A stretch of DNA of 63,876 nt, filler included, from Octopus bimaculoides (Eukaryota): the NCBI RefSeq assembly GCF_001194135.2. It is 7 parts of 6 records of this genome, joined end to end, with 100 filler letters (N's around TTAATTAATTAA, not from the genome) between each part and the next. Parts side by side here need not be neighbours in the genome. Positions count along the whole stretch, not along the records: positions 46,767 to 52,992 come from NC_068991.1; 6 more parts are not named here. The stretch is one strand, 5' to 3'. Positions 48,311 to 50,684 of this stretch are shown here, in pieces. Both the position numbers and the translations under genes were made by a program. The notes below the pieces were generated by a model. The model was not told the origin of the DNA, did no database searches, and worked only from the letters and a program-made list of their open reading frames with translations. The first letter of the stretch is position 1. The number at the start of each line of letters is the position of its first letter.

Positions 48311-48382
48311 CATTCTCTTCGTCTGTGCTTCTGAATTTGTTTTCAGACCAGCAAGAATTCCAAATATGCCAACCATGATAGT
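48311..48382 (-). CDS. Coding exon 2 (72 nt, phase 0-0) of an MS4A/CD20-like membrane protein
   Basis: Acceptor TTTGTGTTTTATTTAG|, TIMVGIFGILAGLKTNSEAQTKRM, donor ATG|GTAAAA; continues the frame of 50234-50410. Confidence 0.65.
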
Positions 48383-50233
48383 CTAAATAAAACACAAATT
48401 ATACAATTAAATTTTATATTTAGAGAAAAATGAAAATATTGAAGTAATTGTTAAATCTTAAAATAAGATACTAAAGAAAATGAAACTATTAAAAACAATA
48501 AAGAAATATATATTTTGCTTTCTGCTTCATCAACCATAGTTTCTTAATATTGACTGCTGTAAGAACTCTGCCTTTTATTTTGCCATGCCAGTAATATTTA
48601 CTCCTGTTCACCAAAAACTGATGCCTCCTGTCATGATTTGTGGCTATATATAATTGCACTTAAAGGATGGAGCCAAAAATTTTACTTGTCATGTGTTGGT
48701 AGTTAAATTCATCTGCCAGCAAGTGTGTTTTGCTAGGAAATAGAATCCTAATTTCATTGGCAAAGCTTGAGTGCAACTGGATACTTCTTGTATGTAAGTA
48801 TGTATGTATGTAATAATACAAAGAATATATATGCATGTATACACACATATATGTACATACTTACATCTATATGTGTATATAGATGCATATCAAGGTACAG
48901 GACGTTAGAAAAATGAACTACAGACAACGGAACAAACACATAGGAAAACAGATAGCCACTTGGAATTATTCCTTCATCAGCTGCCTCTATTCTAACTAGG
49001 CGTTTCGAAGCTATGTATGTATGTATGTATGTATGTATGTATGTATATGTGTGTGTGTGTGTGCATGTGTATGTATGTCTGTATGTATATTATGGTTTCA
49101 CTTAGGCAGACTAATACTAACTAGTTGTTAGAATTTGATATATATATATGATTTAGAATAAAGCAGTAGGTGAATACAGAGTTTAATATCAATGCTATTT
49201 ATCATATATATATATATATATATAAAATAAAGTACCAGTCAAATACCAGAATTGATGTAATCAACTTGCCCCCTCCCTTCAAAAATTGCTAGCCTTGCAC
49301 TTTGCAACAGACTGGTGCCCATGGTAACCAGGTAACCAGCTTTATGGGTCCCAGAGCTCAAGAAAAATAAAAAGTTCAGTTCATAAAATCTTACATAATG
49401 TTTCAATTTTCTTTCAGAGTAATTTAAATCCCAAAACAAAAGATATACTGATGCAAAAGGGCTTTTTTCCAGAGAAAAAATATAGTTATCAATACTACAT
49501 AATTGTGTATACTGATAGAATATGAGGCACTGGAAAAATAAATATAAAATAAAATCTGGTTTATGATCATTATTAGATATGGGCATTATTTTACGGAAAC
49601 TTTTTTCCAAATTGTTGACCGATTTTTTTTTTTTTTCGTAAAACATTGTTTTAAAGTGTTTCATCTCTGCCATAAAATGCCTTCTATGCAGTTTCAGGTT
49701 GAGAGAACTTCCAAATGCTATTCTAAACAGGGTTCCAATATTGTTAGCTACAAGCAAGTATTCCTCAAAACAATGCCAATTTAAGCATCAAAACAGAAAA
49801 AAAAAAAAAAATGAAATTAACAGCCTCAAGACTATCCATGAGTATTAAAAAACTTAGATGTATTACAATATATTTTTGATCACTATACAGTTGTTATAAA
49901 AACCAATATCAGTTACGTAACTTTCCTTATTATGCCCCAAGTTCCATTGTCTGTTTTGGCATGGTATCTACAGATGGATGCCCTTCCTAGTGTCAACTTC
50001 TTTACAAAATGTACTGGATGCTTTTTATGTGGCACTAGCACAGGTACTTCTTACGTGGAACTGGTACAGATGCTTTTTATGTGGCACCATCACCAGTGCT
50101 GTCCATGAGTGTTAATTGAAAAACTAAAGTGTATTTCAATATTTTTTTGATCAGTATACAGTATCATAAAAAAACAATACCAGTTATATAACTATCCTTA
50201 TTAGGATAGATAAATGTAGGAATCAATACTTAC

Positions 50234-50410
50234 CCATAGACTTGCAATACATGCTGGTGTAGCAACTAGCAGAGACAGATTGTGCTTGCCATTTATTTTT
50301 ACTACTCTTGTGGAATATCCCATCATTGAAATAATAAAACACAAAGCTCCAATGCCCAAATGAAATGCTCCTGTTATTGTCATAGCTGTGTACTTGAAAC
50401 CAAAAATCAT
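50234..50410 (-). CDS. First coding exon of an MS4A/CD20-like multi-pass membrane protein (exon 50234-50434 including 24 nt UTR)
   Basis: Acceptor TTTTCTTTATCTTTAG|, in-frame TAA before ATG, MIFGFKYTAMTITGAFHLGIGALCFIISMMGY..ATPACIASLW, donor TGG|GTAAGT. Confidence 0.65.
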
Positions 50411-50684
50411 CTTTGATGGTTATGTGAGACTTATCTAAAGATAAAGAAAAGTTTTAAAAAGTCAGAAAAAGAAAATGAATTTAAACTACAAAACGTATAT
50501 AAATATATAAGCTTGCATTTCGAGATACCCAGGGTGGAAAATCATCAGGGCATGAAAAAGGACAATACAAGGATTGCATTATGATCAATTGGAATACTCC
50601 AATAGACTCTTCAAAATACAATATATTAAACCAGTGTATCTTGGACAAAATTATCCCTATAAGAGGTTTAAATATCCTCATAGT

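What the first reader, a model, noticed from the sequence alone, without database searches (positions are those of the whole stretch)
48311..50434. Hidden spliced gene for an MS4A/CD20-like membrane protein
Seen: two minus-strand exons with clean AG/GT sites and matching phase splice to MIFGFKYTAMTITGAFHLGIGALCFIISMMGYSTRVVKINGKHNLSLLVATPACIASLW-TIMVGIFGILAGLKTNSEAQTKRM, i.e. a very short N-terminus and two hydrophobic segments. Known: MS4A/CD20-family TM1 (G..ql.iG.l) and TM2 (W....sG.lgi.a) look like this, and mammalian MS4As include chemosensors. Inference: a possibly uncharacterised cephalopod tetraspan protein, perhaps sensory. The ORF track misses exon 2. TM3/TM4 exons were not found and may lie in a gap or beyond the 46711 join.
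Basis: partly seen in the sequence, partly recalled or inferred. Interest (0 to 1): 0.7.

Follow-up and report, generated by a model that had tools for sequence, protein, structure and literature searches.

The report
Annotated octopus four-helix membrane-protein gene
The two exons are real, but they are the first two coding exons of an already annotated, uncharacterised Octopus bimaculoides gene (LOC106868672) for a small four-pass membrane protein of a cephalopod gene family; its likeness to CD20/MS4A shows weakly in predicted fold and is not demonstrable in sequence.

Summary
Observation confirmed. Both minus-strand exons (50410..50234 and 48382..48311) exist with canonical sites and splice in phase to the 83-aa peptide. 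The gene is not hidden. The peptide is 100% identical to residues 1-83 of XP_014769533.1 / A0A0L8HTJ3, "uncharacterized protein LOC106868672" of Octopus bimaculoides (209 aa). The piece is 100% identical to chromosome CM046611.1. A unique GT-AG five-exon model reproduces the protein. The TM3, TM4 and tail exons start 15.1 kb downstream, beyond the piece's edge.

The protein belongs to a tandemly duplicated family seen here only in cephalopods (Octopus, Argonauta, Acanthosepion, transcript contigs). The family has four helices, an invariant His in TM1, GxxGxxxG in TM2, an acidic residue in TM4, a CCCC cluster after TM4 and a disordered tail.

MS4A/CD20 membership is not shown:
- Pfam CD20 never reaches threshold (2 of 25 members, sub-threshold).
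- A profile search of PDB sequences finds no CD20-like protein.
- hhalign against CD20 gives 2% probability.

Two independent AlphaFold models do rank Fc-epsilon-RI beta, sarcospan and CD20 (CD20 and sarcospan score as Pfam CD20-like here) at or near the top of Foldseek. E-values are 0.03-0.4, which is not significant. A sensory role has no support, and the extracellular loops are tiny. This is an ordinary lineage-specific orphan gene of low interest.

The parts
50411..50434 (-). Probable 5' untranslated leader of the ATG-bearing exon. It follows a polypyrimidine tract and acceptor AG at 50436-50435, which implies a further non-coding exon upstream.
   Evidence: Sequence. The acceptor and 24-nt leader are conserved in paralogues LOC106868670 and LOC106868669. 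Inferred, no RNA evidence.
50234..50410 (-). Coding exon 1 of LOC106868672: residues 1-59 (short N-terminus, TM1, first extracellular loop with an NLS sequon, first half of TM2). Donor gtaagt.
   Evidence: Equals L001 10001-10177. AlphaFold helices 5-33 and 45-71.
48383..50233 (-). Intron 1 (1851 nt, GT..AG, phase 0). It contains repeats, a (TATG)n tract and a chance 172-aa ORF.
   Evidence: Alignable to the paralogues' introns at 69-80% identity.
48311..48382 (-). Coding exon 2: residues 60-83 (second half of TM2 with GxxGxxxG, start of the TM2-TM3 loop). Acceptor ttatttag, donor gtaaaa.
   Evidence: Equals L001 12029-12100. Relatives align across the junction without a gap.
46767..48310 (-). 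First 1544 nt of intron 2, which is 15,140 nt on the chromosome. It runs to the edge of the piece, which abuts a 1,599-nt assembly gap. It contains a SINE-like repeat.
   Evidence: The next exon (TM3) is at L001 27241-27330, outside the piece.

Best explanation
Window 50434..48311 (minus strand) holds the first two coding exons of Octopus bimaculoides LOC106868672. This is an intact five-coding-exon, 23.5-kb gene on chromosome CM046611.1 (about 55.15-55.17 Mb). It encodes a 209-residue membrane protein with four transmembrane helices.

The gene is one of at least three paralogues within 93 kb. It belongs to a family found here only in cephalopods.

Shown:
- gene identity and exon structure;
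- conserved intron positions among paralogues;
- coding constraint;
- a confident four-helix bundle with very short connecting loops and a disordered C-terminal tail;
- family invariants: His17 in TM1; Gly64, Gly67 and Gly71 in TM2; Glu/Asp in TM4; CCCC directly after TM4.

Inferred mechanism:
- N- and C-termini are cytoplasmic.
- The Cys cluster is palmitoylated.
- The protein works as a small lipid-anchored auxiliary or scaffolding subunit that packs laterally against other membrane proteins. The fold-nearest proteins, Fc-epsilon-RI beta, sarcospan and CD20, work this way. It is unlikely to bind ligands itself.
- In most family members the tail carries a PPxY motif, which would recruit Nedd4-type ubiquitin ligases for sorting. 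This gene's subclade has lost that motif.
For: Identity and location:
- The peptide equals residues 1-83 of P0013, which is XP_014769533.1 / A0A0L8HTJ3.
- The piece is 100% identical to GCA_001194135.2 CM046611.1.

Gene model:
- A unique GT-AG model reproduces the protein, with all introns in phase 0.
- Paralogues at 55.12 and 55.21 Mb have the same intron positions.
- dN/dS is 0.46-0.51 against these paralogues.

Family:
- Exhaustive phmmer found 6 true relatives with E from 1.7e-25 to 1.6e-8. The alignment to P0001 runs 1-83 to 1-83 without a gap across the junction.
- The profile search found 30 relatives with E of 3.7e-15 or better. All named ones are cephalopods.
- Relatives occur as uninterrupted CDS on 1-1.8 kb contigs from many runs. 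One run is a Sepia pharaonis transcriptome.

Structure and motifs:
- AlphaFold: helices have pLDDT above 90, at 5-33, 45-71, 77-116 and 122-149. The tail has pLDDT below 50. A second member gave the same architecture.
- Invariant columns are listed.
- A CCC or CCCC run occurs in 34 of 34 members that reach TM4. PPxY occurs in 18 of those 34 and is absent from P0013.
- Foldseek's top hits for both models are Fc-epsilon-RI beta and sarcospan, with target-normalised TM-scores of 0.46-0.64.
Against: - No RNA reads of this species could be examined. P0013 has no Logan transcript source listed, so expression and tissue are unknown.
- Topology, palmitoylation and the scaffold role are inferences from motifs and analogy.
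- Foldseek E-values are not significant (0.03 or worse). Designed four-helix bundles, tetraspanins and synaptogyrin score almost as well.
- dN/dS near 0.5 indicates fairly relaxed constraint.
- No annotated orthologue of this particular paralogue appeared in O. sinensis or O. vulgaris.
Confidence: 0.8

Rival explanations
1. The family is a true, very divergent branch of the CD20-like superfamily (Pfam PF04103: MS4A, TMEM176, sarcospan). It shares ancestry and the lateral-association mode of action.
For: - In two independent AlphaFold models (P0013, and P0022 at 39% identity to it), the top three Foldseek PDB hits are Fc-epsilon-RI beta (twice) and sarcospan. CD20 ranks 19 and 7.
- 9c3c_n is sarcospan, and sarcospan scores E = 4.6e-27 on Pfam CD20.
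- Two paralogues give sub-threshold Pfam CD20 hits in register with TM1-TM2 (E = 5.7e-4 and 0.067).
- hhalign pairs TM1 with TM1, including the His. The score is 23.5, against 14-16 for reversed-sequence controls.
Against: - No member reaches the Pfam gathering score (20.4 bits at best, against 27.9).
- Only 2 of 25 members hit CD20 at all. Unrelated TM families (DUF6463, tetraspanin, DUF981) hit at similar E-values.
- The family profile finds no CD20-like sequence in the PDB at E up to 10.
- hhalign probability is 1-2%.
- Foldseek E-values are 0.03-0.4.
- The TM3-TM4 loop, which is large in CD20 and sarcospan by established knowledge, is about 5 residues here.
- Zuccolo et al. 2010 concluded that invertebrates lack MS4A-like genes and that short TM similarities are unreliable (PMC2826416).
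Confidence: 0.35
2. It is a chemosensory receptor of suckers, skin or olfactory organ, by analogy with mammalian MS4A chemosensors.
For: Only analogy. Multi-copy, fast-evolving tandem paralogues (dN/dS about 0.5) are a pattern that chemoreceptor families also show.
Against: - The modelled extracellular loops are about 11 and 5 residues, which leaves almost no exposed surface for ligands.
- There are no expression data.
- MS4A membership itself is unproven.
- The most conserved parts are the TM cores and the cytoplasmic Cys cluster, not the loops.
Confidence: 0.04
3. The exons are chance ORFs, a dead pseudogene copy or part of a transposon.
For: - In this AT-rich piece, ORFs of 70-170 aa occur by chance, for example the 172-aa ORF inside intron 1.
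- No transcript of this exact gene was seen here.
Against: - The full 209-aa reading frame is intact across five canonical exons.
- Intron positions are conserved.
- dN/dS is below 1.
- The family is conserved between octopods and the cuttlefish Acanthosepion/Sepia pharaonis, with transcripts.
- The exons are not repeated beyond the paralogues.
- There is no transposon domain.
Confidence: 0.02

Closest known systems
CD20-like family, Pfam PF04103 (MS4A1/CD20, MS4A2/Fc-epsilon-RI beta, sarcospan)
   Same: - Small proteins with four TM helices and, by inference, both termini in the cytoplasm.
- A TM1 motif G-x-F-H-x-x-x-G like that of CD20.
- Best Foldseek neighbours for two independent models, with target-normalised TM-scores of 0.46-0.64.
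- A cytoplasmic tail that carries short linear motifs.
   Different: - No significant sequence or profile similarity.
- The N-terminus is only about 4 residues.
- The TM3-TM4 loop is about 5 residues, not a sizeable ectodomain loop.
- There is an invariant CCCC cluster after TM4.
- A different lineage: Zuccolo et al. 2010 found no clear MS4A in invertebrates.
LAPTM4/LAPTM5 and NDFIP-type PY-motif membrane adaptors (named from established knowledge, not tested as homologues)
   Same: Small multi-pass proteins. Their cytoplasmic tails carry PPxY motifs that bind WW domains of Nedd4-family ligases. 18 of 34 family members have PPxY in the C-terminal tail.
   Different: - No Pfam Mtp or other hit.
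- The gene in this window and its closest paralogues lack PPxY.
- Any resemblance is functional analogy only.
Other tetraspan families (tetraspanins CD81/uroplakin, MARVEL/synaptogyrin, claudin/TARP)
   Same: Four-helix membrane bundles. They appear in the Foldseek lists at slightly worse E-values. UniProt's automatic names for paralogues include 'Claudin' and 'MARVEL domain-containing'.
   Different: - No large EC2 domain as in tetraspanins, and no extracellular beta-sheet as in claudins: the model has no strands.
- Pfam hits are sub-threshold only: tetraspanin in 3 of 25 members, MARVEL in 1 of 25.

Membership tests
MS4A / CD20-like (Pfam PF04103) | Matches the Pfam CD20 model at or above its gathering score (27.9 bits) | tested here: not met
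   No hit at E up to 10 for the 83-aa peptide and none at E up to 1 for the full protein P0013. Only 2 of 25 family members hit, with best E = 9.3e-4. Paralogue P0004 scores 20.4 bits. The positive control sarcospan scores 95.4 bits.
MS4A / CD20-like (Pfam PF04103) | Detectable sequence or profile homology to bona fide members (CD20, Fc-epsilon-RI beta, sarcospan) | tested here: not met
   phmmer and the family-profile hmmsearch against PDB sequences find none of them at E up to 10. hhalign of the family against CD20 gives probability 1.0%, and against 20 CD20 orthologues 2.3%, covering 15 columns in TM1. Reversed controls score 14-16 against 23.5. The CD20 profile was shallow (mammals only).
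MS4A / CD20-like (Pfam PF04103) | Four transmembrane helices with both termini cytoplasmic | tested here: met
   AlphaFold gives four helices with pLDDT above 90 in two members. The orientation is inferred from the CCCC cluster and PPxY motifs in the C-terminal tail, not measured.
MS4A / CD20-like (Pfam PF04103) | Three-dimensional fold matching solved CD20-like structures better than other four-helix membrane proteins | tested here: inconclusive
   The top three Foldseek hits in both searches are Fc-epsilon-RI beta (twice) and sarcospan, and CD20 ranks 19 and 7. But E-values are 0.03-0.4, with no hit at E of 0.001 or better. CD81, synaptogyrin and designed bundles follow closely.
MS4A / CD20-like (Pfam PF04103) | Sizeable second extracellular loop between TM3 and TM4 (the epitope or ligand loop of CD20 and MS4A chemosensors; from established knowledge) | tested here: not met
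   Helix 3 ends at residue 116 and helix 4 starts at 122 in P0013. In P0022 the boundaries are 112 and 116.
MS4A chemosensors | Expression in sensory neurons and ligand-evoked responses | not testable with these tools
No paper mentions the gene.
Cephalopod CCCC tetraspan family (defined here: LOC106868669/70/72 and relatives) | N-terminal M-I-x-G-F-x-Y-x-A-M-T-I-T-G-x-x-H, TM2 G-x-x-G-x-x-x-G, TM4 E/D-F-x-L-A-I-V-S-S-S-I-C-C-C-C, and shared intron positions | tested here: met
   The window peptide carries the N-terminal and TM2 motifs. Full-length P0013 carries all of them. Intron positions are identical in three paralogues.

The most novel reading that the evidence does not exclude
The cephalopod CCCC tetraspans are a cryptic, highly diverged branch of the CD20-like/MS4A superfamily. 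That would place MS4A-like proteins in protostomes, against the published view that invertebrates lack them. They would serve as lineage-specific auxiliary subunits of cephalopod receptor complexes, possibly in sensory or immune cells.
Probability: 0.12. Interest if true: 0.5.

Novelty: already known. Interest (0 to 1): 0.2.

Why it matters
As it stands, it matters little. The gene model has been in RefSeq and UniProt since the first octopus genome. It is one of the many nominally cephalopod-specific genes; about 1,600 are reported for a squid genome in PMC9068888.

What this work adds is a description of its family. The members are tandemly duplicated four-helix proteins with an invariant membrane His, a Gly zipper, an acidic TM4 residue, a CCCC cluster and, mostly, a PPxY tail. 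No Pfam model covers them, and no paper was found on them.

If the weak but reproducible fold link to Fc-epsilon-RI beta, sarcospan and CD20 reflects ancestry, it would extend the CD20-like superfamily into molluscs. It would also nominate these proteins as partner subunits of cephalopod membrane receptors.

Tried and rejected
1. The word-indexed protein search with the 83-aa peptide returned nothing. This was a false negative, because an identical database protein exists. The exhaustive phmmer opened the case.
3. Pfam on the peptide and on every ORF of 60 aa or more in the piece found nothing meaningful.
4. tblastn with full-length relatives, looking for the TM3/TM4 exons inside the piece, found none. 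They lie outside it.
5. P0007 (647 aa, E = 2e-5, six short stretches) is a repetitive protein that matches only residues 41-59. It was rejected as spurious.
6. The first ~135 nt of intron 2 are 85% conserved among three paralogues. I considered a functional intronic element, such as an RNA-editing complement or an alternative terminal exon. I rejected this because introns are alignable throughout at 69-81%, about the same as the exons. The conservation therefore reflects recent duplication.
7. The 172-aa ORF in intron 1 has no Pfam hit. It is conserved with the paralogues for only about 29 codons, so it is a chance ORF.
8. The third homologue search, with CD20 as query, returned only mammalian CD20 orthologues. 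The MS4A profile for hhalign was therefore shallow.
9. Rfam and tRNA scans of the piece were empty.
10. Literature searches by gene and protein accession found no papers.

Full report
**The observation**

On the minus strand an ATG at 50410 opens 59 codons that end with TGG at 50234, directly before gtaagt. After the acceptor ttgtgttttatttag, 24 codons run from 48382 to 48311, directly before gtaaaa.

An in-frame TAA lies 15 nt upstream of the ATG. A polypyrimidine tract plus AG at 50436-50435 suggests that the ATG exon starts at 50434. The same acceptor and 24-nt leader are conserved in two paralogues.

The piece has 587 N at 50729-51315, several microsatellites and dispersed repeats.

**What the gene is**

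Pfam, a PDB sequence search and the word-indexed protein search all returned nothing for the peptide. The exhaustive phmmer against 1.84 billion representatives found six real relatives, with E from 1.7e-25 to 1.6e-8. The best aligns residues 1-83 to 1-83 without a gap across the proposed junction.

A profile of these relatives retrieved 30 proteins with E of 3.7e-15 or better, and nothing between that and 0.01. P0013 is XP_014769533.1 / UniProt A0A0L8HTJ3 / EukProt EP00106_P002091, "uncharacterized protein LOC106868672 [Octopus bimaculoides]", 209 aa. The negative result was therefore a false negative of the word index.

**Where it sits**

The locus was fetched as L001 (GCA_001194135.2, chromosome CM046611.1, 55,140,505-55,184,017, reversed). 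The piece matches it at 100% identity over 3,962 and 1,677 nt on either side of the N run. That places the piece at about 55,170,374-55,176,599.

A brute-force search over GT/AG boundaries gives one solution that reproduces all 209 residues:

| Coding exon | L001 coordinates | Window coordinates | Content |
|---|---|---|---|
| 1 | 10001-10177 | 50410-50234 | aa 1-59 |
| 2 | 12029-12100 | 48382-48311 | aa 60-83 |
| 3 | 27241-27330 | outside piece | TM3 |
| 4 | 30773-30892 | outside piece | TM4 and CCCC |
| 5 | 33343-33513 | outside piece | tail and stop |

All introns are phase 0. Intron 2 is 15,140 nt, and the piece stops 1,544 nt into it at a 1,599-nt assembly gap. The claim that the gene is hidden is not.

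**Evidence that it is a working gene**

- Two paralogues flank it: LOC106868670 (55,120,773-55,139,012, + strand) and LOC106868669 (55,205,679-55,213,309, - strand).
- Both have introns at the same codons.
- dN/dS of LOC106868672 against them is 0.51 and 0.46, with dS 0.54-0.56. This is purifying but fairly relaxed selection after recent duplication.
- Introns are still alignable at 69-81% identity. That also explains the striking 85% conservation of the first ~135 nt of intron 2.
- More distant relatives (P0022, P0020) occur as uninterrupted CDS with flanking UTRs on 1-1.8 kb Logan contigs from many runs. One run, SRR3011300, is a Sepia pharaonis whole-animal transcriptome (PMC5541922). The homologous junctions are therefore spliced in RNA in other cephalopods.
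- I could not examine reads of O. bimaculoides itself. P0013 lists no Logan source, so expression of this copy is not shown here.

**The family**

Named members come from O. bimaculoides, O. sinensis, O. vulgaris, Argonauta hians and Acanthosepion (Sepia) pharaonis. The rest are unnamed transcript-like contigs. None has a precomputed Pfam domain. UniProt's automatic names ("Claudin", "MARVEL domain-containing", "GPCR family 1 profile") disagree with one another.

Conserved features from the alignment of 25-26 members:
- Invariant: His17, Gly64, Gly67, Gly71, Leu93, Ala95, Ile140, Ser144 and Cys147-149.
- Nearly invariant: the N-terminal M-I-x-G-F-x-Y-x-A-M-T-I-T-G, Trp59, and E/D-F-x-L-A-I-V-S-S-S-I-C-C-C-C-S.

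A CCC or CCCC run follows TM4 in all 34 members that reach it. A PPxY motif sits in the C-terminal tail of 18 of those 34. It is absent from P0013 and its nearest paralogues, which instead share an NxS/T sequon in the first loop.

AlphaFold2 with the family alignment gives four long helices (5-33, 45-71, 77-116, 122-149) with pLDDT mostly above 90, connecting loops of about 11, 5 and 5 residues, and a disordered tail. A second member, P0022, gives the same architecture with mean pLDDT 82.

**Testing the MS4A/CD20 idea**

*Sequence level*
- No Pfam CD20 hit for the peptide or for P0013.
- Among 25 members only two hit CD20, sub-threshold (best E = 9.3e-4). Paralogue P0004 reaches 20.4 bits against a cut-off of 27.9.
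- Unrelated hydrophobic families hit as well: DUF6463 in 7 members, tetraspanin in 3, and DUF981 at E = 6e-4.
- The family profile finds no CD20, Fc-epsilon-RI beta or sarcospan sequence in the PDB at E up to 10. CD20 itself finds Fc-epsilon-RI beta at 3e-8.
- hhalign of the family against CD20 gives 1.0% probability. Against 20 CD20 orthologues it gives 2.3%, aligning only 15 columns of TM1 (ITGxLHxxlG with MNGLFHIALG). The score of 23.5 exceeds the reversed-sequence controls of 14-16 but is far from significant.
Zuccolo et al. warned of exactly this for invertebrate "MS4A-like" sequences (PMC2826416).

*Fold level*
- Foldseek against the PDB gives no hit with E of 0.001 or better.
- For P0013 the top three are Fc-epsilon-RI beta (8y81_B, E = 0.031), 9c3c_n (target-normalised TM-score 0.62, rmsd 3.0 Å) and Fc-epsilon-RI beta (8k7t_B). 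CD20 is at rank 19.
- 9c3c_n is sarcospan, and sarcospan is a strong Pfam CD20-like member.
- The independent P0022 model again puts Fc-epsilon-RI beta twice and sarcospan in the first three places (target-normalised TM-score 0.50-0.64), with CD20 at rank 7.
- Tetraspanins, synaptogyrin, V-ATPase c subunits and designed four-helix bundles follow closely.

I read this as a reproducible hint of a CD20-like fold, with perhaps a one-in-three chance of true remote homology. It is not membership. The sizeable TM3-TM4 loop of CD20 and sarcospan, known from the literature, is absent here.

**Mechanism**

Shown: a compact four-helix membrane bundle with almost nothing exposed outside the membrane; a conserved polar pair (His in TM1, Glu/Asp in TM4); a Gly zipper in TM2; a membrane-proximal Cys cluster; and a disordered tail.

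Inferred:
- The tail and the Cys cluster are cytoplasmic.
- The cysteines are S-acylated.
- The protein acts as a small auxiliary or scaffolding subunit that packs sideways against partner membrane proteins, as Fc-epsilon-RI beta, sarcospan and CD20 do.
- PPxY-bearing members probably recruit Nedd4-type ligases for sorting. LOC106868672 has lost that motif and carries repeated NVAYP units instead.

A ligand-binding chemosensory role is unlikely given the loops, and it is untested.

**Verdict**

The gene is already annotated. Its family is an undescribed but ordinary lineage-specific orphan family, one of many in cephalopods (PMC9068888). No paper mentions these loci. Interest is low. The only reading with some novelty is a cryptic CD20-like branch in molluscs.

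Noticed in passing
window 52025-52366 (minus strand), about 1.6 kb upstream of the ATG exon: A 113-aa ORF, basic and Cys-rich (...KNCNCNDQSCCPLGGNYLEKGIVYRPKV...). It has no Pfam hit and is single-copy within the three loci fetched. From memory the Cys pattern resembles the zinc-knuckle/GIY-YIG region of Penelope-like retroelements, but this was not verified.
   Followed up: partly
window 49239-49757 (minus strand), inside intron 1: A 172-aa ORF on the gene's strand, unusually long for 30% GC sequence. 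It has no Pfam hit and is alignable to the paralogues' introns for only about 29 codons, so it is most likely a chance ORF.
   Followed up: yes
window 48175-48310 (start of intron 2); L002 4987-5120; L003 4332-4470: The first ~135 nt of intron 2 are 85% identical among three paralogues. Reading through the donor gives 'VKI...'. UniProt A0A0L8FQP1 (P0004, 96 aa) ends in ...LMVKIL and looks like such a read-through model. The conservation is explained by recent duplication, since the introns are alignable throughout.
   Followed up: yes
window 49842-50067 and 47817-48130: Dispersed repeats. The first holds about three copies of a 26-nt tandem unit and has 10-11 matches in 77 kb of the three paralogue loci. 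The second is SINE-like with about 4 matches. ARAGORN and Rfam find nothing in either.
   Followed up: partly
window 50729-51315 and 51320-51446; piece edge at 46767: A 587-N assembly gap is followed by an (ATA)42 microsatellite upstream of the gene. The low edge of the piece abuts another 1,599-nt gap on the chromosome. L001 holds 10,963 N in 43.5 kb, so the 5' non-coding exon could sit in unsequenced DNA.
   Followed up: partly
P0008 (O. vulgaris, 268 aa) and P0027, P0028 (family members): P0008 repeats the TM2-TM4 block twice. P0027 and P0028 lack whole helices. These look like mis-joined or truncated gene models of tandem paralogues rather than real architectures.
   Followed up: no
family alignment A2/A6; C-terminal tails: 18 of 34 members carry PPxY near the C-terminus at an aligned position. 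The LOC106868669/70/72 subclade has lost it and shares an N-glycosylation sequon in the first loop instead. This suggests a functional split within the family.
   Followed up: partly
protein searches: LOC106868669 has a 90%-identical counterpart in O. vulgaris/O. sinensis. No annotated protein of those species is more than about 63% identical to LOC106868672 over its full length (65% over the first 83 residues). The gene may be lost, unannotated or specific to O. bimaculoides.
   Followed up: partly
tool behaviour: The word-indexed protein search reported no candidate for an 83-aa query that is 100% identical to a protein in the same database. Negatives from that tool on short hydrophobic queries should not be trusted.
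   Followed up: yes
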